64,000 bases of DNA from Euprymna scolopes (lineage: Eukaryota): NCBI GenBank assembly GCA_053919585.1, contig CM132792.1; one strand, given 5' to 3'. The notes beneath the pieces are model-generated. The model was not told the DNA's origin, did no database searches, and saw only the letters and a program-made list of their open reading frames with translations. The position numbers were made by a program, and so were the translations under genes. Every line of letters begins with the position of its first letter. Position 1 is the first letter of the stretch. This document shows, one piece after another, positions 8,045 through 40,482 of the stretch.

Positions 8045-8088
8045 GCTTTCTTCCCCATTTTTTTTTTAATTTCTTTGTCTCTCTTTAT

Positions 8089-8124
<36 letters not shown>

Positions 8125-8278: not shown

Positions 8279-8311
<33 letters not shown>

Positions 8312-10235: not shown

Positions 10236-10259
10236 GTGTGTGTGTGTGTGTGTGTGTGT
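10236..10259. repeat. (GT)n microsatellite ~310 bp after the stop codon (paralogues ~24374, 37745, 50715)
   Basis: Direct reading; immediately follows an AATAAA hexamer at ~10222. Confidence 0.9.
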
Positions 10260-12711: not shown

Positions 12712-13335
12712 GGCTAATGTATTAAAGGCTAAATAAAATATTTACTTGGAAATGGTTGATGGATAAAAAGATAGATTTTAGAAAAATAAATCTGATTTCA
12801 TGATGTCATCCATTTGCAAGTAAATATATCTACTAAAAAAAGCACTTTAATTAATCATAAATATATAATTTCTCATATTTAAGAGAAAAAATTGTGGAAA
12901 CCATAAAATGGCTTCTGTTCAAGTATATGTGTGTGCATCATGTCAAATCAAGTTGAAAGGAGGAAAGAAAATCAAGATGGCAGTGCCCACAACTTTTATA
13001 ACTAGCGATATCACAAACTGACTCAAAATCCCACTGCTCGACTGCATAAAATTAGGCTTCATAGAGAACGCAGACTGACGGTTGTATGAGAATCCTCGGA
13101 GAATGTTGTTACTGAGTCACTTTGTTTTCTTGCTTTTTTTTTGCTTGTTTTTTTTTTTTTGTACTTTCGTTTTTGTTGTACAAGCTATTTTTGGCAAATT
13201 TTATGGACAAATATGACATGAGTTGATTTCTGAATTCGAAAGATTCCTTGCTGATCCCTCCGCTATTGAATGGTTTGAAAAAGCTAAACGTGTTACCAGG
13301 CTGTTCAACTTATAAGAACCCATACCCAAAAGAGT

Positions 13336-14912
13336 ATGGCTCCATGGAAGCGTTCACTGCCAACGTAGAAGTGTGCGCACAAACGCTAAGACAATGATGG
13401 TGATGAGGAGAGGATGTGTCACTTCTGAATTTTTGAAAGGCTTTTGTCTCTGTTGCGTCTGCACTAACATTTTTTGGACTTCAGTTTAGTATGCAAGGAT
13501 CCGGTGTGACTAAAAGATGGAGCAGGAGTTCTGGGCTTGCAGGTCTGGAAAGAAAACAACATCCTCCAACGGAAACAAGGAAATCAGATTCCGGTAATTC
13601 CCGGTGTGCTGACATGTCGGTGTGTGTTTTCCCTGTGTGGGAAACTTGTTTGTCATTTTTCTGTGTGTGGATGGTCACAGTCAAGCGCCTGACGACTGCA
13701 GCAACCAAGGGATGGGAGGATGACATCAAACACCCCGATTTCTGTCACATATTATTGGAGATGCTGAGCAGGGTACAAGAGCAGGACCCTGTTAAAGGAG
13801 ACTGGAGCAGGAGCGGCAGCAAGATTACAGTCTGGCTAGATGTGAGTTCCATAGCTACAGGAATGGCATAGAAGGCAAGCGGTAATGTCATCGAAGTACA
13901 ATGTTGGCTGTGTCTGACCAATGATTCTAGGCATATAAATTTAGCTGAGCTTGACGTGATGCTCAGAGTGGGAGGAGCAACTGAGCCCTCGAATTGGTCA
14001 ATCATTTGGTGTGTATGCAACGGTGGATTTCTGACACCCTGTCCAGGAAGGCATGGGTAAATACAAAGGCTGCTTGTGAGATGCTGGTTAGGCAACAGTT
14101 ATGAACCATGCAATCTAGTGAAAGAGTATGAATTGACCATGGTTGAATTGACCATGGATGTGATGGATGTAAGAAGACCTTTTCACCAGATTACTGCTAA
14201 AGGAAGGAGGATCCGTGCTTGAAAGATGTTCACTAGTGGAAGGAGGACTACACCAAGACCATGTAGTCAATCTCCATTATCAAAGCGGACATCCGGGTGT
14301 GAATGAACTCTGTACTTTGTCAGTTTAATTGACCCACAAGTGTCCAACGAGAATATGAAATCTGTTGTAAAACCCTGTGAAATCTGTCAGCTAATCGATC
14401 TGGCACCTGATCGCTGAATAACATGGAAAGTAAATGCGAAAAGCAAAACTGAAGCAGACTGGCAGTGGATATAACTCACTACAACAGCAAAACTTTTTTG
14501 ACACTTGCGGTCCATCTAGGTTTGCATCTTACAATAAGAAAGTGTCTTCCTTGAACGAGGCTCACTAATGAAGATACTAATTTACAATTGCATTGCATTT
14601 GCTAGTGAGGAGTTCACGAGATTTGTGGATAGTTGGATTGTGCATCTGTAGTTTTGACATGCCTGTTCGGTGAGTGGGCACAGGATCATCGAACAAAACA
14701 ACCGGCAAGACTGCTGGTATAACTTCACCCAAACGATGACGTTTCACTTTCCACAGCACCAGCCAATGCATTGCACAGGTACCATGTAAGGAATTGTTTG
14801 GGTTAAAAACTTGCATGGCAGGTGTATGACAAGATATGTCATACACCTACAGATATATATGCATCACTGAGATATTCAGCTTGTGATTAGTGTGGGTTGT
14901 TGGTGTGCTCCG
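13336..14912 (+). mobile_element. Decayed Gypsy-type pol remnant, family B (RNase H + integrase)
   Basis: Broken frames give VKR...TKGWEDD...RVQEQDPVKGDW...VWLDVSSIATG, WLCLTNDSRHINLAELD (RNase H-like), GHPGV...TLYFV...VVKPCEICQLID (zinc-binding), RLAVDITHY and AFASEEFTRFVDSW (DDE core). Confidence 0.78.
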
Positions 14913-15075
14913 TCACTTTAAAGTTTTATGACCAGCGATGCAATTGCAATCATCATTTGATGATAAAAGCGAATCAGATTCTGAGACAGTGAGCTATCAC
15001 TTTGGTTTAAGCCAGCTCCATCAGTCAGTGATTTAGATATTAGCAGCCTCCTGGGACAGTCGGGACTCCCTGCTC

Positions 15076-15123
<48 letters not shown>

Positions 15124-15226
15124 TTATATATAGATAGATAGATAGATAGATATATCTCATCTACCTCCTTGCCAGAAGACAACAACAAGACTATTGTAAC
15201 ACTGATTTATATCTTAAATCTATTAT

Positions 15227-15304
<78 letters not shown>

Positions 15305-15971
15305 TATACATGCATGTTTTCTTACCTTATAATACAATGTTGGGAAGAAGAAAGAATTCCAAATAGATGTGTAATTTCTTATTTTTTCTTGAACTCAGAG
15401 TCACCTGGGTTAGTTAAACTGGTTCCTTCAAATGCATTTACTGCATCTTACACAAAAGCTGACCAAGGTTGGCAATCCATTGTTGGCAATAATTTTTTAA
15501 CACTTTCAACAGCCTGTCACAGTTCCAATGGCGAATACCATAGATTGACAAACTTGGAATCAGTTCAGTATCTTGTTGAACGTTTCTAAGCCACTTTTTA
15601 AGCTGGCTGCTGCATCATTCATCAAACCTTAAGGAGGAACCGGTTGATGGCTTCTCTAATGGAGGCTTCTCTTGCTGAAAGTGGTGGGTGTGACCAGCTC
15701 AATGAAGATGATTATGTGGCACTACGTTCAGACTGACATCAGTCAGTCAGGACACACACAGGATGCGACACACACAGCAATGACGTGTGATGCAAGCATC
15801 ATCACTGCGTACAAGAATAAGTGTTACCATGGTGACTGCAATAACTACTGTGGAATTTTTCTCCTTAGTTTTATTGGAAAAATCTTTGGTTGAATCGTCC
15901 CCAACAGCCTGCAGTTGCTTACAGAGCATGTATATGTGAGTAACAATATGAGCTTATAACAAGAAGATCAA

Positions 15972-17000
15972 CTGTCGACATTACTTTTGTTTTGCCTATG
16001 AGAGTTCCAGGACAAAATGTTACAAACATAGGCAATTGCTGTACATCACCTTCATCGACCTGACTAAAGCCTTTGACCTTATCACCATAAAATGACATTT
16101 CATTTGTTCAAGAAAATTGCATGTTACTTCAGACTCCTAAATGTATCACATTTATTCATAAGGACATGCAGTACAATACGATGACTCTTTCAAAAACCCT
16201 TTCCCAATCAAGAGTGAAACAGGGTTGTACAATTGCTTCAACAGTCTTTAGCATCTTCTTTTTTCTGCTGTTTTCCTACACATTCAACAAGTCAGAGGAT
16301 GGAGTGAATCTCCATACCAGAGACAGTGGCAGAATTTTCAACCTTCGTCACGTTTTAACTAAGAACAAAATGCATGACGTGAAATATATGTGAGATGCTC
16401 TTTGCTGATGATGCAGCGCTGATGAGACACTCTGCTGAATCATTGCAGTGACTCATCCATTGCTTTGTGCATGCATGTAAAAGACTAACATCTTTGACCA
16501 ATATGTATGCATTAACCTAAACATCAATATTGAGGCCGTCAAAAAATGTACATACATCGGCTCCAATGTATCCAGGAATATCTCTCTGGACGAAGAAATC
16601 ACCAAACATTTAAGCAAATTAGCAACAAATATGGCTAGCTTGATAAAGAGTGTCTCAAACAACAATATGCAAATCAACAATACTCAGCAAACAGCTCTAG
16701 CAGGACAACATCTCAAAGAAAATCATCTTTGATCAGGCAAATAACCCGTCCATATTTGCTCTGCTTACCTAACAACGACTTTGGCAGCTTTGCTGTGCCA
16801 GGCAAAAAGATACTGAGAAGAGCCGAAAGGATCTTCTTTATAGTGAGATCATATTAGATCAGTAGGAAATCATGTCATACGCTATAAGGATGTTTGTAAG
16901 CAAGACATAAGGGTAGTTGGCATCGACCCAGCAGGCTGGGAGTTTGCAGCTGCTGAAGAAGAGCTGTAAAGACACGTTCCAAGAGGAGTGAAAAGAGGAG
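15972..17000 (+). mobile_element. RTE-clade LINE reverse-transcriptase remnant (unit 2)
   Basis: LYITFIDLTKAFDL (~16040-16080), RVKQGCTIASTVFSIFF...SEDGVNLHTRDSGRIFNL and EMLFADDAAL: RT motifs of RTE/BovB-like elements, broken by stops and frameshifts. Confidence 0.87.
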
Positions 17001-17799
17001 AGACCAGCAGAGGAGAGAGAACACATATTGCACAGATTGCAACTCTTACATCTGTGGCGTCTGTAACTCAGCCTGTCAATCCAAGATAGGCTTGCATGTT
17101 TCAGAAGATGCTGCAATTTACCAACAGACGAATCTGAGGTGCAGAACACCATTGTCTTCTGAAACAGATGGATGCAAACAAAAATGCTCGATGATGTTCT
17201 GTCATATCCGTCCATCAAGACAAGGTTGGGAATATGGACATGACCTTATCAATTGTGAAAAAAGCGGAAGTTACAAATTTAGTTCGATTTAGAGATGAGT
17301 CTAAAAAATGTGATTAAAACAAGAAATAACGATGCAGAAGAGCAACAGATTCAACTCATTTATTTACATATCAAATTATATTCCTCACATGTGTAACTTG
17401 ATGTTAATTACACTCATTAAAGATGTGGAGGGTGTTGAAGTCTTTGCTGAGAATTCATATATCTACCATTTCCAAAACTATGTAATGTGTAATGCTGCTT
17501 TGTGGTAGATATTAATATTATGTGGATAGTGCAGCATCAGTAGGATTGAGAAATAGAAAATCTACAAAGCAAAAAGTCAAAATCTGAATAAGACAACAAA
17601 AAACAAAACAACAACAAAACGATAATTAGTTAAACAATGGAATGTTTTTCTCTTCGCAATTTTTCGTAGAACAGTTTTTGAAGTTTCAACCTTGGTCCTA
17701 TCATCGCACAGAATTTGTTTGGGTGTAGAAAACAGATGACCACACAACAAGAACGCTCCTTGTTCAGCCATGTTTAATGTTTGTGGTGAGTCGCTACAG

Positions 17800-18865
17800 T
17801 ACCCCACTATTAGACAGAATGTCGATAGGAAAGCAAAAACTGTTATGTAGTATAGTTAGTGAATCGGTGAGGACATTGATATGTCTGCCTGACCTGGTAG
17901 ACTGTGTTGGTTTAGGTGAGACGCCGTTGCTGAAATAAACTGTATGCGTAGGCTACGTTGGTTTCTGACTTGTGGTATCGTCGTGGGCTTTGTGTAACGT
18001 GTCTGAAGAATACCGTGCACTCCGTCATTCTGGATAATTACATGAGTCCATGTGTTAATATTCTGGGGAACATGAGTAGTGACATTTTTGTGGTCTGGCT
18101 TTAATATTCAGAAGTTTTGCCATTTATTCCTTCACGCGAGAGGTGTAGCTCATTGGGTATGGCATCTGCTCTGGTGTAGCTGGTGTGTCCATCTCTCTGG
18201 GTAAGGTCAGTGAGGTTCCGTAAACCATTTCGTTGGAAGACAAGCCGATGTCCATTTTAACAATCGATTGAATACCGAGAAGCACAAAAGGCAGGCATTC
18301 TATCCATCTGATGGGGTCAGAGTATGCTTTAAGACATGCTTTTAACTGTCGAGGCAAGGTGCTAAATCATGCCGTTTGCTGTTGGGTGATAAGACATAGT
18401 GCATATGTTTCTGCATCCAAGCAGGCGGTACAGCTCGAAAAAAAGATGTGAGTCAAATTGTCAGTTGTAATGGTATTAGGTATGCCATAACGGGATATCC
18501 AATGTATAATGAGTGCTTTGGTGACAGTTTAAGCAGAAATATCTCTAATCGGGAATGGCTTCAGGCCATCTCGAATACCTGGTGGATGTGGACCCATTAT
18601 GTCTATGTGGATAAGCTGAAAACGAGCCTTGGGGGTTAAAAACGTTGCAGGAGGACTCTAAATGTGACGTTGAATCTTGGACTTCTGGCAAGGAAGACAA
18701 CCCCGTGTCCATTCTCGTATATCTCGATTGATGGCAGTCCATACAAAACGTGACATCACCAATTTCTTAGTCAAATGGACGCCAGGATGTGACAGACTCT
18801 GCAGCTTTGTAAACACAACTCGCTTATGCTTGAGGGGCACATATGGACGCTCGTGACCATATCAC
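17800..18865 (-). mobile_element. Gypsy integrase remnant, family A (unit 2)
   Basis: SLSHPGVHLTKKLVMSRFVWTAINRDIREWTRGCLPCQKSKIQRH (integrase zinc-binding region) plus the RQLKA...LPFVLLG core. Confidence 0.85.
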
Positions 18866-19538
18866 TTCATTGGAGAAACGTAAAGAAAATTGCTTGAACA
18901 TTAGGTTTAGCGATCCTGTTGCAGTTTCAAATCACTACCCTTTTTTTAATTCCCCCCCCTTTTCATCATCGATTTCGCTACACATGTCGGAATTCAAATA
19001 TATCAAACAAAACGCCAATAATTCAGGCAATTGACTTTTTACTTTTTAGACGACTGATGCTACCAGTCACGTTGACCGAATCTTCCAGCCAAAGGATTTC
19101 CAACAGTGGCAGCCGTCTTAGCAGCAGGTCAAACATCTCTTATAAGGTCTAAACAACCAGCCCTTATCAAGGCTAATAAGTTTTTCACTAATGCGATTCA
19201 CTACTGCTTGCCTTCTGAGACCCACCAGCAGAACACTTCACTTTCACCTCTGGCCTGCAACCTCGTTCCTCCGATCTGCAACCTCGCATGCACCTGGTTC
19301 CCTACTGACCATTCGTTCCTTATCACTGACCCCACGTCCTCACTGTCGTCCATTCCTTAACACTGACCCCACATTCTCAGTGTCCACTGACCATTCCAGA
19401 TCGCCCTGACGGCCAGCCGATCGTCCAGACCCAGCGAGAAACCCTAAACCAGAGTACCTGGTCCAGCCCTCCAGACCAAGCCTCCGGTAACATGCGACCT
19501 TCCGGACAACTAGCATCCAGCTCATATAATTTTTCGCA

Positions 19539-19728
19539 TTTTTTTTTTTTTTTTACCACTTATCAAGACTAAGAGGCCACTACAGGATAACGGTTAAAAA
19601 GTGTACAGTAGAAATTGGACAATATAGTAATCGTTAGTAAATGGAAATTCGGTAAATTTGTTAACAAGTGAAACGGCTAATCAGGAACTTGTTTACGTTA
19701 GGCTTGAAGACAATCATATTGTAGTCAG
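19539..19728 (-). mobile_element. CR1-like LINE 3' fragment (unit 2)
   Basis: Paralogous to 5911-6110; flanks atttttcgca / atttcttcgca. Confidence 0.75.
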
Positions 19729-19933
19729 ATTTCTTCGCAAATAAAAGGCGAACCTTCGCCTTTAACCAAACAACCTGTGTCGGTCATTCTCCTTTCCTTT
19801 TTGCTTTTTACTTTTGCCCGTGTCTACATTGTTAGTTGTAGGGTCGATTGTCCCAGTATAACCGGCCCCGCAGCAATCCAATTCTTTGCATCCTATTGAT
19901 TTCGCTCAAACTCCTTAAGCGCCGCGCTATTTG

Positions 19934-19937
<4 letters not shown>

Positions 19938-20013
<76 letters not shown>
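19938..20013. repeat. (TA)n microsatellite (paralogues ~33979, 47100, 59452)
   Basis: Direct reading. Confidence 0.95.
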
Positions 20014-20017
<4 letters not shown>

Positions 20018-21810
20018 CACTAGCATTTTCTTCCAATAATAAACTTTTAGCTTAATTGAGTTTATCTCTATTTTTATCACAAGTATTTTTATATCTTTCA
20101 ATAAATCAGTTTTAGTTGGATCGAGTTTATAGATTTGAAAATTGTAAAATTATTTATTTTTACTTAAATTTTACTTGAATTGTGAATCATTAATTAATTT
20201 AAATTTAAATCGTTTAATATCGTTTAATATATATAATTTAGCCTTTTCATCGAATTAGTAACTAAAATAATATTTTGAATTATGATGCGAGATGAATTAC
20301 TTCCCTTTAACCGTTTCTTTAAGTTATTTTAAATAATTTAACTCGCCTCTTTTTTTTTTTTAATGACGAAGTCGGTATTTCATGTTTTCAGCGTTAAGTG
20401 CTGACATAAAATAAAAAGAATAATTTTTTTGTCACTTGATAATGATGTATATATCGGCAAAAGTATGGGCTGAAATCAAATATTAATAATAAATAATATT
20501 ACATTATATATTATATTCGCACATAATCGGGCCAGAAATCTTCAACTCGCATAAGGCCTGGAGGTGGAATCAGCTGAGTTTGAATGAGGGTTAATCAACA
20601 AATTTATCGAATATGTAATAAATGTTTTAATCGTTTAACCTTAGCTTAAAATGCCAAGAAAAGTTGAGAAACTCGGCACCCGACATAAACATGTATTCTA
20701 GCTAGTATCGATTGATCGATCGATGCCTCCGTTCAGTCTCAAGAGACAATGGACACCCCTATAAGGTAGCTGCACATGGAATTGGGAGGCAAGGCTACGC
20801 AATCTTAAGAGTGACGGGAACAATGGCGAGATAAGCGAAGAACACACACAGCATCTGGAAATGCTAAATGGTCAATCATAATTATGAAACAGATTTGAAT
20901 CAAAATTGATATAAGGATTCTAGACGTAAATGTTCAGTTGCATTATTTAATCATTTTTTATCTTCGTAAGGGACCATACATAACTTGACTTCACGGAATA
21001 AAAACAGAGCCGATCCAAGACAGCAGACCGAGTAAATACACGGGCTCAATATCACGCCAGATAGATTTTTATAAACAAAATTGGATTATCTTAAAACTTT
21101 ACTTCAATTTCAAAGTCGAATATCATGGATGAAAAAAGTCACGTTTAAAACATTTTCAATCCACGTAACGTAAAAACCACTCCACGAGCTGACGCCGTGC
21201 TAAATAAATTGAATAATAATTTAAAAAAAAAAAAAAAGCGTTATAATTCAATTCTGGTTTGTTTGAGCTTACATTCAAATGTATAGAGACGTGTGGAATG
21301 AAATACAAACCTGACGTTCGGATCAACTGTGAAACTGCAGCAAAGCTAAGAAGCATTTAATCTTTAAAAATATTTTAGCAAATTATTAATTTAAAATCAA
21401 ATATCTATTCTGTTTCTATTCTCGGCCAAAGAAGGAAATATTCTTCTAGATTAAGAAATTTAGTCCCTTTTTCTAAGCTGAATTTTTCCCTACAATAAAA
21501 CACATTCCATTTTTAACTGCTTTGATCGCAAGGCAAGTATATACTACTATGTAAGCATTCGATTTTTTCGACGGATTTTGTTTAATATGTATTGATTGTA
21601 AATTTTGGAAATAAGTTATATTTTTTGATTAATCATGCGTTTTTTAAAGCTTTCTTCACCATTTTTAAAAAAATTTCTTCGTCTCTCTTTATCCCCCCTC
21701 TCTCTCTTTCTCATATTCCTATCTCTAGCTTCTCTCTTCTCCCTCTCTTGCTTTCTGTTCCTTTTCCCTCTTTCTCCTTTTTCGACGCGCTATTCGTTTT
21801 AACCACATTA

Positions 21811-22388
21811 CGTCCAAGGATGGAATACTGTTGCCACATCTGGCAGGAGCTGCTAGAAAGGACTTGGCCTGCCTTGATAGAATTCAAAATAGACTTCGTA
21901 GCCTCGTAGGAGATGTCCTTTTCTCTTCCTTGGAACCTCTATCTCACAGAAGAGATGTTGCGAGTTTGTCTCTGATGTATCGTTATTTTCATGGAAAGTG
22001 TTCGACTGAGCTTCAATCTATGGTCCCCCCTCGCCAAACTTTCACAAGAAACACTCGTCTAGCTGTAAACACTATCAATAATTCCCCCCACTCTTTATCT
22101 GTGCCTAAACCTAAACGTAGATTCCATGAACAAAGCTTCTTTCTTAGAACTGCGCGCCTGTGGAATTGTCTTCCGTTTTCCTGCTTTCCGGCTGACTACA
22201 ATATGGTTGTCTTCAAGTCTAACGTAAATAAGTTCTTGATGAGCCGTTCCATATAAGTTATAAAATTTACCAAAATTTCATTACTAATGATTACTATATT
22301 GTCCAATTTCTAATGTACACTCTTTAACCCTTATCCTTGAGTGGCCTCTTGGCCTTGATAATGTGGTGATGCCTATGTAAAAAAAAAA
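21811..22388 (+). mobile_element. 5'-truncated CR1/L2-group LINE insertion (ORF2 C-terminus, 3'UTR, A-tail) ~440 bp upstream of copy 2
   Basis: Encodes RPRMEYCCHIW/AGAARKDLACLDRIQNR...LSHRRDVASLSLMYRYFHG...FFLRTARLWNCLP...FKSNVN, typical of invertebrate CR1-like ORF2 ends (1-nt frameshift after HIW). Ends in an A-tail, flanked by atta/atta. Absent at the equivalent site of copies 1, 3 and 4. Confidence 0.88.
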
Positions 22389-22825
22389 ATTATCTCTAAT
22401 TCCTTCATCCTCCTCTTCCTCACCACTCTCCTCCTACTCCTCTCTCTGTCTTTCTCTTTCGCCTTTTTCTTTCTCCTCCTCCTCATTCTCATATCATAAA
22501 AACCTGTTTCCTCTTCTCAATTTTCTCCTTTCTCCCCCCCCCTCCTCCTACTTTCTCTCTTCACTTCTCTCTCACTCTCTTGACCACTCTCTTTGTTAAT
22601 CATTTACGGCATTCGCTTCCTCCCACTACTTCTCTTATCATTAGCTGTTTTTATTCGAGACGCCAAGTCATTTTCTGTTTGAGACGCTACTCAAAAGATA
22701 CACGCTACCATAACAAGTAAACAAGATCCACAGTGATTAACTTTTATTTTAATTAATAAGTGAGAAAAGACCTTTTGGGCTATTCTTTCGCAAAAAAGTT
22801 TTAAAAAAAAAAAAATTATTTCAAA

Positions 22826-24064
22826 ATGGACGCTCCAAAGATCCAGAAAAATAAGGATCAGGTTAGAAAAAAGAAAGATGTTAAAGTGAACGCTTCACGC
22901 GTCCAGAAAAAAAATGGTCGTGTTAAAAAGCCCCTGAATGCTTATTTCGTCTGGTGCAAACAGTTCAGAAAACAAATACGTGAACAAAATCCGACCATCA
23001 CCATTATTGAAGCCAATGCCCTTCTCGGGAAAATATGGAGTGAAATGTCAGCGGAACAGAAAAAACCTTACTTCAAAGAGGCAGAACTTATCAAGAAACA
23101 ACACCAATTAGATTATCCCGATTTCGAGTTTAAGTCGAAACCACGTGTTAAAAACCCCAACAGGTTCCATGCCTACCCCTATCAACAACATGTGGTGTAT
23201 TACATACAAACGCTGCCAAGCAAAGATAGAATGCCTCAGGAATATTTTCATGAATCCACTTTCTTTGAGGTAACAAACAAAGCGGTAACTCAAGAAAATT
23301 CTCCTCACGTGCTCGGTACAGATGAAAGCATCAGATCCACGTTTTCTGAAATGCCATCCGAGACACGCGAGAATCTTTCCAACAAGAACAGCGTATGTGT
23401 TCCGCTACCAGAGACCGAACTCGACAAGGAGTCACCGGCATTCAGTAATGAACACCTATACAAAAGGCAGTCGAAATACAATCCCGTACTCATGACGGCT
23501 GGTCAAGACAACGATAGAGAGGTGATGGAATTTTCGTCTGCTCACTCCAAATCAGAGAGCATTTCTGTAACGCTTCCTCACGCACCTGAGCAAAACGGGG
23601 TTTATTTTCATCCTGAATGTTACGGTCATGAATGCAATAATAGTAAGTCACAAAATTTTACAGCTTTAACTTACTCGCAAGCTAAAAATAAACTAATGGA
23701 AAAGTTTCAATTCTTAGACGAGAATTCGCCTATAAATACACCAATATGCAACGCAAATATTTTTCTTGGTGTTGAGAACGATAAAAATACGACGTTTTCT
23801 GAAGAAACTCTTGAAGAAGCCCAACATCTCACTTTTGTTGAAGATTATATTATCAATGCAACACTAAATACCGAGGAACATATCAACGAATGCACCGAAA
23901 TGTTCCCCAACACGAAATCTGATATTTTGAACGATGACGATTTCGAATCCCTTAATTGTCTGGAAGATTTGGTCTCGACTTTCTGCTTAGGTGAAGATTT
24001 CCCATCTACAATGTTTTGGAACGAAGAAGGTATTAATTTGGAAGACTTTGCAGAACTGTTGTGA
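22826..24064 (+). CDS. Intronless Sox/SRY-like HMG-box transcription factor, copy 2 (412 aa)
   Basis: Full ORF, 12 aa differences from copy 1; HMG box begins RVKKPLNAYFVW. Confidence 0.92.
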   Translation: MDAPKIQKNKDQVRKKKDVKVNASRVQKKNGRVKKPLNAYFVWCKQFRKQIREQNPTITIIEANALLGKIWSEMSAEQKKPYFKEAELIKKQHQLDYPDFEFKSKPRVKNPNRFHAYPYQQHVVYYIQTLPSKDRMPQEYFHESTFFEVTNKAVTQENSPHVLGTDESIRSTFSEMPSETRENLSNKNSVCVPLPETELDKESPAFSNEHLYKRQSKYNPVLMTAGQDNDREVMEFSSAHSKSESISVTLPHAPEQNGVYFHPECYGHECNNSKSQNFTALTYSQAKNKLMEKFQFLDENSPINTPICNANIFLGVENDKNTTFSEETLEEAQHLTFVEDYIINATLNTEEHINECTEMFPNTKSDILNDDDFESLNCLEDLVSTFCLGEDFPSTMFWNEEGINLEDFAELL

Positions 24065-25470
24065 TTTTGTATATCGATTGATAATTCAATCGATTAATTT
24101 GATCACATGATCGATGATATCTTTGATATCATGTGTATATATTTTCTATTGTTCAATTTGTTTAATGTTATTTATTGATTTTAATTTTTTTCATTAGTGA
24201 TTTTAAAAAAGTATGACTCTCAGGAATCTCGGATAACGAAAGATAAACAGCTAAGCAAGCATACATCATATGCAAAAATTTTACCAACGATCAAACATCA
24301 TTTTTAGAGTATTGATTTATTTAACGAGCAGTTTTAACAAGTTTGTTGTTACAATAATAATAAACATAATCGGGTGTGTGTGTGTGTGTTAATTTAAAAC
24401 GAAACGAAACCACCGACTATACATTAAACGTACAGAAACGGTAGATACATACGAAAGAAACACTTTATAAATTAGTTTCTCGTTATTTTGTTTATTAATT
24501 ATTGAATTTCTTTTTTTAATAATTCTGTAAAATAAATTTTATTTCAATAAAATGTTTCATGTAACGTTAAATTTGTTTGTTTATTTATTGCAAAATGTAA
24601 GTTTCATCCGACAAGGCCGGATTAAGCTTACAGAGAGACATTTTTTTGTTTTCTGTCCTCGATGTTTTCACATGCGACAAATGTAAAATTTCCTGTGATT
24701 TTGAACTTTCTTGATTGAAGCAATTTCGTTCCGGTTCATTTAACTTTCCCATTTTTTCGTTTCAACAATGTTAAATTATTTTTATTCTTGATTATTAACT
24801 CTTTCGGAACACTTATCTATGGGCAGTTTTTATCCAACTTCAATTTTATTTATATACACTTTTTCTTATCACTTGAAATTTGGTGCATGTTGCCAGTGTG
24901 AGTGAGAAATGTTCAAACATTGCGCTCTACAATATAAGCACAAATTTTATAACCTAATTCTAAACCTACCCTGTACCTTACTCTAAATTGCAGTCGTGGT
25001 TAGTGGTAAAAAATTGTTAACTACCCCAAAATGCAAGAATGGCATTTACATTGAATTCAGACTAAAATGACTCCAGTCAAGAAAGTTCAAAACGGTCAGA
25101 TTCATTATGTAGCCTGAATCAAAATAAGAGGTCATTTAAGGAGACTGTGATATTTTGGTCACAGCTCGTTAAATAAGTCGCTATGATAAATAGAGATAAA
25201 AGATACCTTTGTAAACAGTACAATCCCCACGGTGAACCCTAAGTACTGGGTGGGAAAGAGCAACTTCTTATTTAAATAATTTAAGTCATTTAAATAAGCA
25301 AGTTGCTCTGCCCCACCCTGTATAATGTTAACCAAGGTAAACATCAAAACAACCAATGTCATTCATTGTTGGATCAAAATTTGTTATATATATATAACGT
25401 AATAATCAGTAATAAATATATAATTTCTCATATTTAATATTGATAATTATGTTTAGATAGGAAAAGGCTG

Positions 25471-25843
25471 TAGGCACCGCCAAAACTGTGGGGGCAGGTC
25501 AGTACTTTTTGACGGACCGTCTTTTTAAAAATCTACCAAAAATCAGATAATTATCCGATCAATACGAAATTTTCAGCGATTATTAGGAGAAGAATGAACT
25601 TTATAACAGTGTACTTATTTTTCATAAACGATATTTATATATATATTTTTTTTTTTGCTTACAACCCCCCCCCCCCTTGTTTTGAAGTGGGAACAAATAT
25701 GCTTAAAATAATCATCTGAAAATTCAGGGTTTTATCTTTCTAGAAAAAAAAATGTTACTCAGAAATAATGGAGTTTAATAAATGTAATTTCGTTTTAAAA
25801 AACAACAACAACTTGATTTTTCGGCCATTTTTGGCGGTGCCTA
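25471..25843. mobile_element. Internally deleted copy of the TIR element (373 bp)
   Basis: Same TIRs and flanks; ~980 bp removed at atcatctgaa|aattcaggg. Confidence 0.8.
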
Positions 25844-26589
25844 GGCTAATGTATTAAAGGCTAAATAAAATATTTACTTGGAAATGGTTGATGGATAAAA
25901 AAATAGATTTTAGAAAAATAAATCTGATTTCATGATGTCATCCATTTGCAAGTAAATATATCTACTAAAAAAAGCACTTTAATTAATAATAAATATATAA
26001 TTTCTCATATTTAAGAGAAAAAATTGTGGAGACCATAAAATGGCTTCTGTTCAAGTATATGTGTGTGCATCATGTCAAATCAAGTTGAAAGGAGGAAAGA
26101 AAATCAAGATGGCAGCGCCCACAACTTTTATAACTAGCGATATCACAAACTGACTCAAAATCCCACTGCTCGACTGCATAAAATTAGGCTTCATAGAGAA
26201 CGCAGACTGACGGTTGTATGAGAATCCTTGGAGAATGTTGTTACTGAGTCACTTTGTTTTCTTGCTTTTTTTTTGCTTGTTTTTTTTTTTTTTGTACTTT
26301 CGTTTTTGTTGTACAAGCTATTTTTGGCAAATTTTATGGACAAATATGACATGAGTTGATTCCTGAATTCGAAAGATTCCTTGCTGATCCCTCCGCTATT
26401 GAATGGTTTGAAAAAGCTAAACGTGTTACCAGGCTGTTCAACTTATAAGAACCCATACCCAAAAGAGTCTCTCATCCAAATGCAGTTCACAAAAGGAGTC
26501 TACACGATGTACAACCAACTCGGGAATGACATACATTATACAACGGGAGATGTGAAAATTGGTGGAAGAAGTGTGTGGGGTGGGGCTTA

Positions 26590-27598
26590 GGTTGCAGAGT
26601 ATAAGGTGCCTGATAGCATCAGAGAAAAGTATGAGAAAAAAATACTGGGGCCTCCTGATTCCTTTAATGGCGGTTGTCCAGTGCTGGACTACTATGAATT
26701 AAATGGCTCCATGGAAGCGTTCACTGTCAACGTAGAAGTGTGCGCACAAACGCTAAGACAATGATGGTGATAAGGAGAGGATGTGTCACTTCTGAATTTT
26801 TGAAAGGCTTTTGTCTCTGTTGCGTCTGCACTAACATTTTTTGGACTTCAGTTTAGTATGCAAGGATCCGGTGTGACTAAAAGATGGAGCAGGAGTTCTG
26901 GGCTTGCAGGTCTGGAAAGAAAACAACATCCTCCAACAGAAACAAGGAAATCAGATTCCGGAAATTCCCGGTGTGCTGACATGTCGGTGTGTGTTTTCCC
27001 TGTGTGGGAAACTTGTTTGTCATTTTTCTGTGTGTGGATGGTCACAGTCAAGCGCCTGACGACTGCAGCAACCAAGGGATGGGAGGATGACATCAAACAC
27101 CCCGATTTCTGTCACATATTATTGGAGATGCTGAGCAGGGTACAAGAGCAGGACCCTGTTAAAGGAGACTGGAGCAGGAGCGGCAACAAGATTACAGTCT
27201 GGCTACATGTGAGTTCCATAGCTACAGGAATGGCATAGAAGGCAAGTGGTAATGTCATCGAAGTACAAGGTTGGCTGTGTCTGACCAATGATTCTAGGCA
27301 TATAAATTAAGCTGAGCTTGACGTGATGCTCAGAGTGGGAGGAGCAACTGAGCCCTCGAATTGGTCAATCATTTGGTGTGTATGCAACGGTGGATTTCTG
27401 ACACCCTGTCCAGGAAGGCATGGGTAAATACAAAGGCTGCTTGTGAGATGCTGGTTAGGCAACACTTATGAACCATGCAATCTAGTAAAAGAGTATGAAT
27501 TGACCATGGTTGAATTGACCACGTGTGAATTGACCATGGATGTGATGGATGTAAGAAGATCTTTTCACCAGATTACTGCTAAAGGAAGGAGGATCCAC
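26590..27598 (+). mobile_element. Gypsy-type pol remnant, family B, integrase part deleted
   Basis: Paralogous to 13336-14215; same ggatccacgtcac deletion junction as at ~378. Confidence 0.72.
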
Positions 27599-27762
27599 GT
27601 CACTTTAAAATTTTTATGACCAGCGATGCAATTGCAATCATCATTTGATGATAAAAGCGAATCAGATTCTGAGACAGTGAGCTATCACTTTGGTTTAAGC
27701 CAGCTCCATCAGAAAGTGAGTTAGATATTTGCAGCCTCCTGGGACAGTCGGGACTCCCTGCT

Positions 27763-27848
<86 letters not shown>

Positions 27849-28106
27849 TATATCTTATCTACCTCCTTGCCAGAAGACTAGACACAAGATCAGTTGTGTT
27901 TTTGAGAAGTGCACTAGGATAAGCGTACTCTGGCCTACAAAAAGTGAATGAGTTGCCCCATTGCTTAGCAATAGAGTAAGCCTTTCTCAAAGAGATGCAA
28001 AGCCTGAGAGATTAAACTTTCTAAGACTAAACAGAGCCAGACCTCAGTCAGACAACAACAAGACTGTTGTAACACTGATTTATATGTTAAATCTATTATA
28101 CAGCAT

Positions 28107-28164
<58 letters not shown>

Positions 28165-28831
28165 TATACATGCATGTTTTCTTGCCTTATAATACAATGT
28201 TGGGAAGAAGAAAGAATTCCAAATAGATGCGTAATTTCTTATTTTTTCTTGAACCCAGATTCACCTGGGTTAGTTAAACTGGTTCCTTCAAATGCATTTA
28301 CTGCATCTTACACAAAAGCTGACCAAGGTTGGCAATCCATTGTTGGCAATAATTTTTTAACACTTTCAACAGCCTGTCACAGTTCCAATGGCGAATACCA
28401 TAGATTGACAAACTTGGAATCAGTTCAGTATCTTGTTGAACTGTTCTAAGCCACTTTTTAAGCTGGCTGCTGCATCATTCATCAAACCTTAAGGAGGAAC
28501 CGGTTGATGGCTTCTCTAATGGAGGCTTCTCTTGCTGAAAGTGGTGGGTGTGACCAGCTCAATGAAGGTGATTATGTGGCACTACGTTCAGACTGACATC
28601 AGTCAGTCAGGACACACACAGGATGCGACACACACAGCAATGACGTGTGATGCAAGCATCATCACTGCGTACAAGAATAAGTGTTACCATGGTGACTGCA
28701 ATAACTACTGTGGAATTTTTCTCCTTAGTTTTATTGGAAAAATCTTTGGTTGAATCGTCCCCAACAGCCTGCAGTTGCTTACAGAGCATGTATATGTGAG
28801 TAACAATATGAGCTTATAACAAGAAGATCAA

Positions 28832-29640
28832 CTGTCGACATTACTTTTCTTTTGCGCATGAGAATTCCAGGACAAAATGTTACAAACAGAGGCAATTGCT
28901 GTACTTCACCTACACATTCAACAAATCAGAGGATGGAGTGAATCTCCATACCAGAGACAGTGGTAGAATTTTAAACCTTGGCCACATTTTAACTAAGACT
29001 AAAATGCATGACGTAAAATATATGTGAGATGCTTTTTGCTGATGATGCACCACTGATGAGACACTCTGCAGAATCATTGCAGTGACTCATCCATTGCTTC
29101 GTGCATGCATGTAAAAGACTAACATCCTTGACCAATATGTATGCATTAACCAAAACACCAATATTGAGGCTGTCCAAAAATGTACATACATCGGCTCCAA
29201 TGTATCCAGGAATATCTTTCTTGATGAAGAAATCACCAAATATATCAGCAAATTAGCAACAAATATGGCTAGCTTGATTAAGAGTGTCTCAAACAACAAT
29301 ATGCAAATCAACAATACTTAGCAAACAGCTCTAGCAGGACAGCATCTCAAAGAAAATCATCTTTGATCAGGCAAATAACCCGTCCATGTTTGCTCTGCTT
29401 ACCTAACAACGACTTTGGCAGCTTTGCTGTGCCAGGCAAAAAAATACTGAGAAGAGCCGAAAGGATCTTCTTTATAGTGAGATCATATTAGATCAGTAGG
29501 AAATCATGTCATACGCTATAAGGATGTTTGTAAGCAAGACACAAGGGTAGTTGGCATCGACCCAGCAGGCTGGGAGTTTGCAGCTGCTGAAGAAGAGCTG
29601 TAAAGACACGTTCCAAGAGGAGTGAAAAGAGGAGAGACCA
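28832..29640 (+). mobile_element. RTE-clade LINE remnant, internally deleted (unit 3)
   Basis: Same cttcacctacacattc deletion junction as unit 1; LFADD motif. Confidence 0.78.
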
Positions 29641-31799
29641 GCAGAGGAGAGAGAACACATATTGCACAGATTGCAACTCTTACATCTGTGGCGTCTGTTA
29701 CTCAGCCTGTCAATCCAAGATAGGCTTGCACGTTTCAGAAGATGCTGCAATTCACCAATGGACCAATCTGAGGTGCAGAACACCATTGTCTTCTGAAACA
29801 GATGGATGCAAACAAAAATGCTCAATGACGTTCTGTCATATCCGTCCATCAAGACAAGGTTGGGAATATGGACATAACCTAATCAACTGAGAAAAAAGTG
29901 GATGTTACTAATTCAGTTCGATTTAGAGATGAGTCTAAAAAAATGTGATTAAAACAAGAAATAACGATGCAGAAGAGCAACAGATTCAACTCATTTATTT
30001 ACATATTAAATTATATTCCTCACATGTTGAACTTGATATTAATTATACTCATTAAAGATGTGGGGGGTGTTGAAGTCTTTGCTGACAATTCATATATTTC
30101 CCATTTCCAAAACTATATAATGTGTAATGCTGCTTTGTGGTAGATATTAATATTATGTGGATAGTGCAGCATCAGTAGGATTGAGAAATAGAAAATCTAC
30201 AAAGCAAAAAATCAAAATCTGAATAAGACAGCAAAAAACAAAACAACAAAAAAACGATAATTAGTTAAACAATGGAATATATTTGTTTCTTTGTGTTTTT
30301 ACTATGTTCTTTGCCCCATAGATAAATTTATCATTTCTTTAAAAATGGTATTGCCTATGCAAACATGAATGTACTGTACACCCGAAACAATATTATACAT
30401 AGCAAATTTTTTAATATATGCGATTTCTTCTTAAATACAAGCTCACTGATGTGTTTGCTGTTTGTGATATGCAATTTTCGTAGAACAGTTTTTGAAGTTT
30501 CAACCTTGGTCCTATCATCGCATTTGTTATGACGTGGGACCAGATCAACGTTGAGTGTCATCACTGCTACTACAGTGAACATTTAAAACGGCAGTTGTTG
30601 CCAGTGTTACGATATAAATGAAACTAGGTTTTTCTAATTCCTCAACGTAAACAAAATATTAAAAAAGGTATTAAAATCAGCATTAAAATGAAGTCGAATA
30701 TAAAAATTAACAATATTGGTTTTTATTTAATATAGCAAGGAATAATGAATCATGCTTTTATTGTTGACGTATTTTAATGTGTGTGCCGACGCAACACACA
30801 AGCAAGAAAATAATAAATGGATTAAAAGTCCAATGTTCCTGAAAATGTGGAAATGTTCTTAAAAGGAAGAGTCCTGACAATAAAGTAATGTTTGTAACTG
30901 TTGTACATAGTCGCTGGGACTATATATATATTTTTAAAACAGCCTGATAAGGTTTAGATTAAAATATGCAGTAAAGAACAAGAGAGAGAAATCTTTCTCT
31001 GACTGAGGCAGAATGTCATTTTTGCAGAATACATGTTTCTTTCTTTTTTTTTAGTTAAAGGAAGATAAAGTTTATTATTTTAATCAGTTCCATGAATATA
31101 TCTGATACAATGCAGAGTTATATATTTTCTTTTGGTAATTAATCCAGGTAGATTTACGGGTTCCAGGTGTAAGATGCACAAAATCATAATAATGGTTTTA
31201 ACGTCGGGAGACAGAACAAGGGTTGTGTGCTTGTTAACACTTCAACGGAAATCTGACTCGACTGGCTGGGTTTCATGTGCAGTGCCTTTTTTTATAGGTG
31301 CAGACTGGCTCCAGCGAAAAATCTTAGAAAAATCTTTTTGAAATTTGCTTTCTTTGAATGCCGATTGGATGAAAAGCCAACACCTCTGTCACATGGGATG
31401 CTTTCAACTATGTCGGTGTGAAAAGACAATGTTTGTTTTTATGCCCACAGAATTTGTTTGGGTGTAGAAAACAGATGCACACACAAGAATGCTCCTTGTT
31501 CAGCCACGTTTAATGTTTGTGGTGAGTCGCTACAGTACCCTCCTTTTATTGTTGACGTATTTTAATGTGTGTGCCGACGCAACACACAAGCAAGAAAATA
31601 ATAAATGGGTTTCATGTGCAGTGCCTTTTTTTATAGGTGCAGACTGGCTCCAGCGAAAAATGTTAGAAAAATCTTTTGGAAATTTGCTTTCTTTGAATGC
31701 CGATTGGATGAAAAGCCAACGCCTCTGTCACATGGGATGCACACACAAGAACGCTCCTTGTCCAGCCACGTTTAATGTTTGTGGTGAGTCGCTACAGTA

Positions 31800-32860
31800 C
31801 CCCACTATTAGACAGAATGTCGATAGGAAAGCAAAAACTGTTACGTAGTATAGTTAGTGAATCAGTGAGGACACTTGATATGTCTGCCTGACCTGGTAGA
31901 CTGTGTTGGTTTAGGTGAGTCGCCGCTGCTGAAATAAACTGTATGCGTAGGCTATGTTGGTTTCTGACTTGTGGTATCACCATGAGCATGTGTAAGGTGT
32001 CTGAAGACTACCGTGCACTCCGTCATTCCAGATGAATACATGAGTCCATGTGTTAATATTCTGGGGAACATGATTAGTGACATTTTTGTGGGCTGGCTTT
32101 AATATTCAGAAGTTTCGACATTTATTCCTTCATGCGAGAGGTGTAGCTCATTGGGTATGGCATGTGCTGCGGTGTAGCTGGTGTGTCCATCTCTCTGGGT
32201 AAGGTCAGTGAGGTTCCGTAAACCATTTCGTCGGAAGACAAGCTGATGTCCATTTTAACAATGGATTGAATACCGAGAAGCACAAAAGGCAGGCATTCTA
32301 TCCATCTGATGGGGTCAGAGTATGCTTTAAGAGATGCCTTTAACTGTCGAGGCAACGCGCTTAATCATGCCGTTTGCTGTTGGGTGATAAGACATAGTGC
32401 ATATGTGTCTGCATCCAAGCAGGCGGGACAGCTCGAAAAAAAGATGTGAGTCAAATTGTCAGTTGTAATAGTATTAGGTATGCCATAACGGGATATCCAA
32501 TGTATAATGAGTGCTTTGGCGATAGTTTTAGCAGAAATATCTCTAATCGGGAATGGCTTCAGGCCATCTCGAATACCTGGTGGGAGTGGAGCCATTATGT
32601 CTATGTGGATATGCTGAAAACGAGCCTTGGGGGTTAAAAACGCTGCAGGAGGACTCTAGATGTGCCGTTGAATCTTGGACTTCTGGCAAGGAAGACAACC
32701 CCGTGTCCATTCTCATATATCTCTATTGATGGCAGTCCATACAAAACGTGACGTCACCAATTTCTGAGTCAAATGGACGCCAGGATGTGATAGACTCTGC
32801 AGCTTTGTAAACACAACTCGCCTATGCTTGAGGGGCACATATGGACGCTCATGACCATAT
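31800..32860 (-). mobile_element. Gypsy integrase remnant, family A (unit 3)
   Basis: PIRDISAKTIAKALIIHWISRYGIPNTITTD and RQLKASL fragments. Confidence 0.85.
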
Positions 32861-33623
32861 TACTTCATTGGAGAAAAGTAAAGAAAATTGCTTGAACGTA
32901 AGGTTTAGCGATCCTGTTGCAGTTTCAAATCACCACCTCCATTTATAATTCTTTCCCCAACCCCTTTTCATCATCGATTTCGCTACACATGTCGGAATTC
33001 AAATATATCAAACAAAACGCGAATAATTCAGGCAATTGACTTTTTTCTTTTTAGACGACTGATACTACCAGTCACGTCCACCGAATCTACCAGCCAAAGT
33101 ATTTCCAGCAGTGGCAGCCGTCTTAGCAGCAGGTCAAACATCTCTTATGAGGTCTAAACAACCAGCCCTTATCAAGGCTAATAAGTTTTTCACTAATGCG
33201 ATTCACTACTGCTTGCCTTCTGAGACCCACCAGCAGCAAACTTCACTTTCACCTCTGGCCTGCAACCTCGCTCCTCTGATCTGCAACCTCACATGCACCT
33301 TGCTCTTTTGCTCTGCAACCTCGCCTGCACCTGGGTCCCTACTGACCATTCGTTACTTAACACTGACCTCTACATTCTCAGTGTTGTCCGTTCCTTATCA
33401 CTGACCCCACGTCCTCACTGTCGTCCATTCCTTAACACTGACCCAACATTCTCAGTGTCCACTGACCGTTCCAGATCGCCCTGAGGGCCAGCCAATCGTC
33501 CAGACCCAGCGAGAAACACTAAACCACGCTATGTCTAGAGTACCTGCTCCAGCCCTCCAGACTAAGCCTCCGGTAACATGCGACCTTCCGAACAACTAGC
33601 ATCCAGATCATACAATTTTTCGC

Positions 33624-33832
33624 TTTTTCTTTTTTTTCTTTTTTTTACATAGGCATTACCACTTATCAAGACAAAGAGGCCACTCGAGGATAACGGTTAA
33701 AAAGTGTACAGTAGAAATTGGACAATATAGTAATCGTTAGTAAATGGAAATTCGGTAAATTTTTTAACAAGTGAAACGGCTAATCATGAACTTGTTTACG
33801 TTAGACTTGAAGACAATCATATTGTAGTCAGC
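33624..33832 (-). mobile_element. CR1-like LINE 3' fragment (unit 3)
   Basis: Paralogous to 5911-6110. Confidence 0.75.
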
Positions 33833-33976
33833 TTTCTTTGCAAATAAAAGGCGAACCTTCACCTTTAACCAAACAACCTGTGTCGGTCATTCTTCTTGCC
33901 TTTTTGCTGTTTACTTTTGCCCGTGTCTTTGCATCCTATTGATTTCGCTCGAACTCCTTAAGCGCCGAGCTATTTG

Positions 33977-34064
<88 letters not shown>

Positions 34065-40418: not shown

Positions 40419-40482
<64 letters not shown>

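What the first reader, a model, noticed from the sequence alone, without database searches (positions are those of the whole stretch)
22916..23146. Hybrid HMG box with rewired DNA-contact residues
Seen: GRVKKPLNAYFVWCKQFRKQIREQNPTITIIEANALLGKIWSEMSAEQKKPYFKEAELIKKQHQLDYPDFEFK aligns gaplessly to SRY. The Sox signature RPMNAF(M/I)VW becomes KPLNAYFVW (KKPLNA as in TCF/LEF; AYF as in HMGB-type boxes). Helix-2 NSEISK becomes IIEANA. Helix 3 resembles Sox30 as I recall it (SEEQKKPYYDEAQKIKEKH). Known: sequence-specific boxes have Asn at box position 10 and a polar residue at 32, while non-specific boxes have Ser10 and a hydrophobic second wedge at 32. This protein combines Asn10 with Ile32. Inference: altered or relaxed DNA specificity and bending relative to canonical Sox proteins.
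Basis: partly seen in the sequence, partly recalled or inferred. Interest (0 to 1): 0.72.

Follow-up and report, generated by a model that had tools for sequence, protein, structure and literature searches.

The report
Amplified, diverged Sox30-type gene in a cephalopod
The stretch is the DNA-binding domain of an intronless Sox30-type switch gene that this cephalopod genome holds in a tandem row of copies, and several residues that normally read the DNA bases have been replaced, so its target preference has probably shifted, though this is untested.

Summary
Window 22916-23146(+) encodes a true HMG box (Pfam 3.5e-19) inside an intronless 412-aa ORF (22826-24064). It has Asn10 with Ile32, and also Lys7, Tyr12-Phe13, Asn36, Phe72 and Phe74.

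It is not a Sox/TCF/HMGB hybrid. A tree places it with cuttlefish 'SOX15_30' proteins (97/89) inside the SoxH/Sox30 clade (97/83). The cuttlefish box hits human SOX30 best, and the box model overlays DNA-bound SOX2, SOX17 and SOX18 at 0.6-0.9 A.

The cuttlefish orthologues are the only full-length relatives found. They keep Arg7, Phe12, Asn32 and Ser36, so the changes are specific to this lineage. Ser36 is invariant in 63 of 63 compared Sox boxes. Asn10 with a hydrophobic residue at 32 also occurs in fish Sox30-like proteins.

The gene lies in a tandem array with a unit of about 13.5 kb. The window holds five copies: four intact, one with a 38-bp frameshift deletion, and one intact copy with Asn10 changed to Asp. 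The absence of indels and dN/dS below 1 argue for selection.

The most likely function is a germline-type Sox activator with relaxed or shifted half-site recognition. Three RNA runs of unknown tissue showed no expression.

The scan had already noted this array on overlapping and adjacent windows.

The parts
22826..24064 (+). Copy c2: intact intronless 412-aa ORF. It has a basic N-terminus, the HMG box, about 250 aa predicted disordered, and an acidic C-terminal 53 aa.
22916..23146 (+). HMG box of copy c2 (the finding): a SoxH-type box with K7, Y12, F13, I32, N36, F72 and F74.
23903..24061 (+). Acidic, hydrophobic C-terminal tail (residues 360-412; 14 acidic, 1 basic). It is partly conserved with cuttlefish. 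Inferred transactivation segment.
8684..9922 (+). Copy c1: intact ORF, but box Asn10 is Asp (N38D).
36236..37436 (+). Copy c3: broken by a 38-bp deletion, located after 36901 and matching c2 23492-23529. The frame shifts after residue 222; the HMG box itself is intact.
49168..50406 (+). Copy c4: intact ORF with a box identical to c2. About 250 bp are missing just upstream of the ATG relative to c1.
62343..63581 (+). Copy c5: intact ORF and the last copy of the array. It carries S72G and F102L (protein numbering).
1..63763 (.). Tandem array with units of about 13.2-14.1 kb that are 94-98% identical. It runs off the window start, and homology ends near 63763.
21810..22389 (+). Retroposon-like 3' end with a poly(A) tail, inserted about 440 bp upstream of c2. 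It is also present upstream of c5 and absent from the other units.

Best explanation
The box belongs to a cephalopod-specific, intronless offshoot of SoxH/Sox30, probably an old retrocopy. In this genome the gene has been amplified into a tandem array with a unit of about 13.5 kb.

The protein most likely still works as a Sox-type transcription factor. A basic N-terminus and the box carry it to the nucleus and to DNA. The L-shaped box enters the minor groove and bends DNA using the retained Asn10, Arg20 and an aromatic/hydrophobic wedge (Tyr12-Phe13). The disordered C-terminal part, ending in an acidic-hydrophobic tail, activates transcription.

Four of the six base-reading residues are replaced (R7K, N32I, S36N, Y74F), and the tail clamp is changed (Y/W72F, P76S). 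Recognition of the half-site read by positions 32 and 36 is therefore probably relaxed or shifted, while the core anchoring is kept.

By descent from SoxH, and from the tandem multi-copy layout, expression in the male germline or another narrow stage is the most likely setting.

Shown here: the fold, the family placement, the residue replacements, the array, and the signs of selection. Inferred: DNA binding, activation, changed specificity, and the tissue.
For: - Domain and fold. Pfam HMG_box 3.5e-19. Box model pLDDT 90.8. It overlays DNA-bound SOX2, SOX18 and SOX17 with TM 0.88-0.92 and rmsd 0.6-0.9 A.
- Family placement. On a tree of 66 boxes the query plus cuttlefish group at 97/89, inside a clade (97/83) that holds all SOX30-named sequences. 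The cuttlefish box scores 100.4 bits against human SOX30 and 77.9 against the next family.
- Full-length relatives. The protein is 41% identical to P0001/P0155 over residues 114-411.
- No intron. The ORF is continuous here. The cuttlefish gene ranges equal the CDS length. SoxH has a strictly conserved intron inside the box across bilaterians (PMC13219418).
- Contact residues. SRY reads bases with R7, N10 and Y74 on one side and R20, N32 and S36 on the other. Ala at 32, 36 or 74 has only mild effects; Ala at 7, 10 or 20 is severe (PMC11458547). Y72F is near-native in SRY and SOX18 (PMC9771472).
- Rarity of the replacements. See the column counts.
- Selection within the array. The four intact CDSs have 0 indels, against about 1 indel event per 100 bp in the flanks. 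Pairwise dN/dS is 0.36-0.83.
- Long-term selection. In the C-terminal part, dN is 0.42 and dS 1.39 against cuttlefish.
- Tail. Net charge is about -13 with short predicted helices.
- Family function. SoxH/Sox30 is testis-biased in octopus, and in scallop it acts in spermiogenesis (PMC11202624, PMC13219418).
Against: - Two poly(A) RNA runs and one single-cell RNA run of the same species gave essentially no depth over the gene, at most about 2x in one run. Their tissues are not known to me.
- dN/dS between copies reaches 0.83, and the number of differences is small.
- One copy is frameshifted, and one intact copy has lost the critical Asn10.
- The C-terminal basic cluster of the box (RPRRK in most Sox proteins) is weakened to KSKPR.
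- No DNA-binding data exist, and I could not model the complex with DNA.
- Retrocopy origin is inferred only from the missing intron. No poly(A) remnant or target-site duplication is left, and I could not show that a canonical SoxH with introns also exists in this genome.
Confidence: 0.6

Rival explanations
1. The array consists of decaying copies. On this view it is a recently amplified, transcriptionally silent retrocopy family under relaxed constraint, and the odd contact residues are the first steps of degeneration and not a new specificity.
For: RNA depth over the gene is about zero in three RNA runs. dN/dS reaches 0.83. Copy c3 is frameshifted and c1 has Asn10->Asp. Substitution density in the CDS (3.3%) is only slightly below that of the 3' flank (3.9%). 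Against SoxH outgroups, the query lineage has about 14 unique box changes and cuttlefish about 5.
Against: Four 1239-bp ORFs have no stop and no indel, while the flanks carry about one indel event per 100 bp. All six pairwise dN/dS values are below 1. The unusual residues are shared by all five copies, so they predate the amplification and have been kept. The hydrophobic core (W15, W43, P8, P70, G40) and the critical N10 and R20 are retained, and the model folds at pLDDT 90.8. The C-terminal region has evolved at dN/dS of about 0.3 against cuttlefish.
Confidence: 0.2
2. The box has become a non-sequence-specific, HMGB-like architectural binder. On this view Ile32 acts as a second hydrophobic wedge, and the protein recognises bent or distorted DNA and not a Sox motif.
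For: Position 32 is hydrophobic, positions 12-13 read Tyr-Phe as in HMGB-type boxes, Ser36 is lost, and the tail is weakened.
Against: Asn10 and Arg20 are kept; in SRY these residues dominate specific binding and bending (PMC11458547). HMGB boxes score about 45 bits against 63 for Sox. The box lies in the SoxH clade. Fish Sox30-like proteins also combine N10 with I or F at position 32. The protein has one box plus an acidic tail, which is a transcription-factor layout.
Confidence: 0.12
3. The array is a conflict-driven ampliconic gene. On this view copy number and fast box evolution reflect an arms race in the germline, such as sex-chromosome or meiotic-drive conflict, or competition with the canonical SoxH for its sites.
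For: The evidence is indirect. Near-identical copies are tandemly amplified. Box evolution is accelerated relative to cuttlefish, where the box is 100% conserved among three species that are 83% identical overall. The family is tied to spermatogenesis (PMC13219418, PMC11202624).
Against: There is no evidence on chromosome, sex linkage or expression. No dN/dS above 1 was measured. The relative-rate test is borderline (p 0.02-0.3).
Confidence: 0.08

Closest known systems
SoxH / SOX30 (human SOX30 HMG box, PDB 7jjk; mollusc SoxH)
   Same: The box is in the same clade on the tree. Helix 3 and the turn are shared: EQKKPY, IK..H, and YP[DG] followed by an aromatic residue. The cuttlefish orthologue hits SOX30 best. 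The fold is a Sox-type L shape.
   Different: This gene lacks the box intron that SoxH genes conserve (PMC13219418). It is 412 aa, against about 750-1000 aa. It shares no similarity with other SoxH proteins outside the box. Its residues are K7, Y12, F13, I32, N36 and F72 where SOX30 has R7, F12, M13, N32, S36 and W72. It is present as a tandem array.
Cuttlefish 'SOX15_30' (Acanthosepion pharaonis CAE1301939.1 = P0155; P0001; P0198)
   Same: These are the only full-length homologues found. They are intronless, have the box at the N-terminus, and share a homologous C-terminal region and acidic end.
   Different: They are 587-592 aa, with about 100 extra residues after the box and an 87-residue C-terminal extension. 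No second copy was called within 10 kb on either side. Their box keeps R7, F12, N32 and S36 and is identical in three species. Identity to the query box is only 39 of 77.
SRY / canonical Sox boxes (SOX2, SOX17, SOX18)
   Same: The alignment is gapless. The box shares the three-helix fold, Asn10, Arg20, Trp15 and Trp43, and a wedge at positions 12-13.
   Different: Identity is 29-36%. Four of the six base-reading residues are changed. The tail reads FEFKSKPR where canonical boxes read YKYRPRRK.
DUX4 / D4Z4-type transcription-factor macrosatellites (from my own knowledge)
   Same: An intronless transcription-factor ORF is carried once per unit of a kilobase-scale tandem repeat.
   Different: The DNA-binding family is unrelated (homeobox). 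This unit is 13.5 kb, against 3.3 kb for D4Z4. Nothing is known here about chromatin state or stage-specific expression.
TCF/LEF and HMGB boxes
   Same: Short strings are shared: KKPLNA as in TCF/LEF, A-Y-F and a hydrophobic residue at 32 as in HMGB-type boxes.
   Different: Overall scores are low (LEF1 28.5 bits, HMGB about 45, against 63.5 for SOX17). The box is not placed with them on the tree. The resemblance is convergent, at single residues.

Membership tests
HMG-box superfamily (Pfam PF00505) | Profile match above the curated cut-off | tested here: met
   69.4 bits against a cut-off of 25.4, E 3.5e-19, residues 33-100
HMG-box superfamily (Pfam PF00505) | Three-helix L-shaped fold | tested here: met
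   AlphaFold model at pLDDT 90.8 with helices at box positions 11-26, 32-45 and 48-68. TM 0.88-0.92 to DNA-bound Sox boxes.
Sox family | Signature RPMNAF[MIL]VW at the start of the box | tested here: not met
   The sequence reads KPLNAYFVW, so 4 of 9 signature positions differ. The cuttlefish orthologue reads RPLNAFFVW. This string test is a convention; tree placement is the stronger criterion.
Sox family | At least about 50% identity to the SRY box (the classical rule, from my own knowledge) | tested here: not met
   About 29-31% identity to SRY and 30-36% to other Sox boxes in structural alignments. About 40% to SOX17 in the sequence alignment.
Sox family | Groups with Sox boxes, not with TCF/LEF, HMGB or CIC | tested here: met
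   PDB scores: SOX17 63.5, SOX30 59.3, HMGB about 45, CIC 34.7, LEF1 28.5. On the tree it sits in a clade with SOX30 sequences. The tree held Sox-type boxes only, so exclusion of TCF and HMGB rests on the scores.
SoxH (Sox30) group | Monophyly with SOX30/SoxH boxes | tested here: met
   A 23-row clade at 97/83 holds the query, cuttlefish, four SOX30-named fish sequences, and gastropod and cnidarian boxes. The alignment has only 82 columns and the branches are long, so support is moderate.
SoxH (Sox30) group | Conserved intron inside the HMG box (PMC13219418) | tested here: not met
   The ORF is continuous through the box in all five copies. The cuttlefish gene ranges equal the CDS length. This is consistent with a retrocopy of SoxH.
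SoxH (Sox30) group | Shared motifs outside the box with other SoxH proteins | tested here: not met
   Only the cuttlefish cluster matches query residues beyond 105.
SoxH (Sox30) group | Testis or spermatid expression and a role in spermiogenesis | tested here: inconclusive
   About zero depth in three RNA runs of unknown tissue.
Sequence-specific HMG boxes | Asn10 plus the base-reading set R7, R20, N32, S36 and Y74 (PMC11458547) | tested here: inconclusive
   N10 and R20 are kept. K7, I32, N36 and F74 replace the others. Whether specificity survives needs a binding assay.

The most novel reading that the evidence does not exclude
After retrocopying from SoxH, one cephalopod lineage rebuilt the base-reading surface of the box. 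The changes include Ser36, which was invariant in every compared Sox box. The lineage then amplified the gene to a macrosatellite. This would create a high-dosage transcription factor with a DNA motif of its own that drives a lineage-specific germline or early-embryo programme. It would be an invertebrate, Sox-based counterpart of the DUX4-type array factors.
Probability: 0.15. Interest if true: 0.75.

Novelty: new variant of a known kind. Interest (0 to 1): 0.45.

Why it matters
Sox boxes are among the most conserved DNA-binding domains in animals, and their base-reading residues are almost never replaced. This is a natural case in which four of six are replaced while the fold and the two critical anchor residues are kept. 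The gene also sits in a multi-copy array.

If the protein binds DNA, it shows which contacts set Sox specificity. It would also give cephalopod biology a candidate lineage-specific regulator, possibly of spermatogenesis.

If it is silent, it shows how a transcription-factor retrocopy decays inside an array.

The family (cuttlefish SOX15_30 plus this array) appears not to have been described. The paper searches found nothing on it.

Tried and rejected
- Word-index protein searches with the whole protein and with the box alone found nothing. The exhaustive HMMER search was needed to find the relatives.
- I considered a TCF/LEF or HMGB affinity and rejected it on scores and tree placement.
- I looked for a folded domain, or any relatives outside cephalopods, for the C-terminal 300 aa. 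There were none, and the full-length model is disordered there.
- I looked for other genes or RNAs in the repeat unit. Eight ORFs of 89-141 aa have no Pfam match, and there is no Rfam match in the window.
- Expression: three RNA runs showed nothing over the gene. A fourth run labelled as possibly RNA (X2) covers coding and non-coding parts evenly and carries Nextera adaptor ends, so I treat it as DNA.
- The cuttlefish Logan contigs of about 3.44 kb, with matching ends in six runs, might be transcripts. There is no poly(A) end, so I do not count them as expression.
- dS between the query and cuttlefish is saturated in the box, so no box dN/dS could be given.
- P0065, a 922-aa SoxH-clade protein that might be a canonical cephalopod SoxH, could not be traced to an organism.
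It stays as recalled knowledge.
- The species name is coded in the tools.

Full report
**1. Observation**

It lies in a 412-aa ORF at 22826-24064(+), which is not interrupted by a stop or an intron. Pfam HMG_box matches residues 33-100 at E 3.5e-19, with 69.4 bits against a cut-off of 25.4.

Against solved structures the best matches are SOX17 (63.5 bits), SOX18, SOX11, SOX30 (59.3) and SOX9. HMGB boxes score about 45, CIC 34.7 and LEF1 28.5. The alignment to SRY is gapless across the box.

In consensus box numbering (protein residue minus 28) the protein has K7, L9, N10, Y12, F13, C16, R20, I32, I33, N36, F72, F74 and S76. The recalled SOX30 helix-3 string is also correct.

**2. Context: a tandem array**

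The gene occurs five times in the window:
- c1 at 8684-9922
- c2 at 22826-24064
- c3 at 36236-37436
- c4 at 49168-50406
- c5 at 62343-63581

Protein identity between copies is 95-97%. The copies sit in tandem units of about 13.2-14.1 kb that are 94-98% identical. The array runs off the window start, and homology ends near 63763.

Copy c3 has a 38-bp deletion that shifts the frame after residue 222. The other four copies are intact. Copy c1 has Asn10->Asp, and c5 has S72G and F102L in protein numbering.

I found nothing else coding or structured in the unit. The exception is a retroposon-like 3' end with a poly(A) tail at 21810-22389, present only in the c2 and c5 units.

**3. Selection within the array**

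- Pairwise dN/dS among intact copies is 0.36-0.83.
- The four intact CDSs have no indel in 1239 bp, while the flanks carry about one indel event per 100 bp. At that rate about 12 events would be expected in the CDS. This is the strongest sign that the reading frame is kept by selection.
- Variable sites are 1.3% in the box, 3.3% in the whole CDS, 3.9% in the 3' flank and 5.9% in the 5' flank.

**4. Relatives**

Two word-index searches found nothing. The exhaustive search of 1.84 billion representatives gave 5046 HMG-box hits but only one true full-length relative, P0001, at E 1.2e-73.

The P0001 cluster contains CAE1301939.1, 'SOX15_30' of the cuttlefish Acanthosepion pharaonis. A third cuttlefish-type protein, P0198, is 83% identical to P0001.

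The query matches these proteins over the box (50% identity) and over residues 114-411 (41%). No other protein matches beyond residue 105.

In two cuttlefish-type genome assemblies the gene range equals the CDS length, so the gene is intronless there too. No second copy was called within 10 kb on either side.

The three cuttlefish proteins have identical boxes.

**5. Family placement**

I built a maximum-likelihood tree of 66 boxes. Rows left out were multi-box proteins, boxes matched only in part, and P0156.

- The query copies group with cuttlefish at 97/89.
- This pair lies inside a 23-row clade (97/83) that holds all sequences named SOX30, plus gastropod and cnidarian boxes.
- That clade is separate from SoxB, SoxF and the other Sox boxes.

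The less derived cuttlefish box hits human SOX30 (7jjk) at 100.4 bits, against 77.9 for the next family.

The family is therefore SoxH-derived. The 'hybrid' with TCF/LEF and HMGB is a set of single-residue convergences.

SoxH genes have a strictly conserved intron inside the box across bilaterians (PMC13219418). Its absence here and in cuttlefish suggests an old retrocopy. That origin is an inference.

**6. How unusual the residues are**

I compared the query with 63 related Sox boxes: 20 in the SoxH clade and 43 others.

| Box position | Related Sox boxes | Query |
|---|---|---|
| 36 | Ser in 63 of 63 | Asn |
| 7 | Arg in 60 of 63 | Lys |
| 32 | Asn in 53 of 63 | Ile |
| 72 | Tyr in 43 of 43 other Sox; Trp in 13 of 20 SoxH | Phe |
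| 60 | Arg or Lys in 53 of 63 | Leu |
| 76 | Pro in 56 of 63 | Ser |

Asn10 with a hydrophobic residue at position 32 is not unique. Fish Sox30-like proteins have I, F or V there.

The cuttlefish orthologues keep R7, F12, N32 and S36, so the replacements arose on the lineage of this genome.

Against eight SoxH outgroups, the query lineage has 11-15 unique box changes and cuttlefish 4-9 (p 0.02-0.3). This suggests faster change but does not prove it.

Between the query and cuttlefish, dS is saturated in the box. In the C-terminal part dN is 0.42 and dS 1.39.

**7. Structure and mechanism**

With 57 aligned boxes, the box model reaches pLDDT 90.8 and has three helices. It overlays DNA-bound SOX2, SOX18 and SOX17 at 0.6-0.9 A with TM 0.88-0.92.

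The full-length model is ordered only in the box. The remainder is predicted disordered, with short helices at 370-384 and 405-411. The last 53 residues hold 14 acidic and 1 basic residue and many bulky hydrophobic ones. They are partly conserved with cuttlefish, as expected of an activation segment.

The SRY crystal structure assigns base contacts to R7, N10 and Y74 on one side of the wedge, and to R20, N32 and S36 on the other. Alanine at 32, 36 or 74 changes affinity and bend only slightly. Alanine at 7, 10 or 20 is severe (PMC11458547). Y72F is near-native in SRY and SOX18 (PMC9771472).

In this protein the severe-class residues N10 and R20 are kept, and R7 becomes Lys. The mild-class residues are all replaced.

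My reading is a Sox-type minor-groove binder and bender whose core anchoring survives, with relaxed or shifted recognition of the half-site read by positions 32 and 36. Copy c1 (Asp10) is probably impaired.

**8. Expression**

Two poly(A) RNA runs and one single-cell run of the same species label gave depth of about 0 over the gene, at most about 2x in one run. The neighbouring retroposon piece reached depths up to about 2000.

The tissues of those runs are unknown to me, and only one laying call was allowed. Run X2 covers coding and non-coding parts evenly and shows Nextera ends, so it is DNA.

SoxH/Sox30 is testis-biased in Octopus sinensis (PMC11202624), and in scallop it acts in spermiogenesis (PMC13219418). 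A narrow germline expression would therefore fit, but it is not shown.

**9. Verdict**

The contact residues are truly replaced, but the box is a derived SoxH box and not a hybrid, and the functional consequence is untested.
- Novelty: a new variant of a known kind.
- The scan had already noted the same array on overlapping and adjacent windows (s1-288413, s1-288471, s1-244823). My results agree with those notes on SoxH descent and on selection.
- My results differ from note s1-288632 on one point: the box is not invariant in the copies of this window.

Noticed in passing
window 21810-22389 (+): Retroposon-like 3' end that finishes in a poly(A) run. It is present only upstream of gene copies c2 and c5. 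It is very abundant in RNA runs (depth up to about 2000), with many variant letters, so it is a high-copy, transcribed repeat family.
   Followed up: partly
window 49125 (c4) compared with 8390-8637 (c1): Copy c4 lacks about 250 bp of the CT-rich stretch that ends about 45 bp before the ATG in the other units. The copies therefore differ in their putative promoter or 5' UTR.
   Followed up: no
window 6295-6424 and 40714-40853: Two runs of N (assembly gaps or masked) lie inside array units. Unit lengths and copy order in the array may not be fully reliable. I left them untouched.
   Followed up: no
window 22400-22580: A long CT-rich, low-complexity tract lies 250-430 bp upstream of the ATG. A (GT)n run lies at about 24375 in the 3' flank. 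AATAAA-type signals lie at about 24531-24550.
   Followed up: no
proteins P0003, P0004, P0006, P0007, P0010: Predicted 'multi-HMG' proteins from other animal genomes consist of 2-4 near-identical Sox- or TCF-like boxes. They look like gene models fused across tandem arrays, so tandem arrays of HMG-box genes seem to recur in other lineages (fish and others).
   Followed up: partly
proteins P0001, P0155, P0198: The three cuttlefish-type orthologues are as little as 83% identical overall but 100% identical in the HMG box. This contrasts sharply with the 39 of 77 box identity to this genome's gene.
   Followed up: yes
locus L001 (3447 nt): Six public runs hold contigs of 3439-3447 nt with the cuttlefish gene at the same offset. 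These could be mRNA, with about 410 nt of 5' UTR and about 1270 nt of 3' UTR. There is no poly(A) end, so this is not proven.
   Followed up: partly
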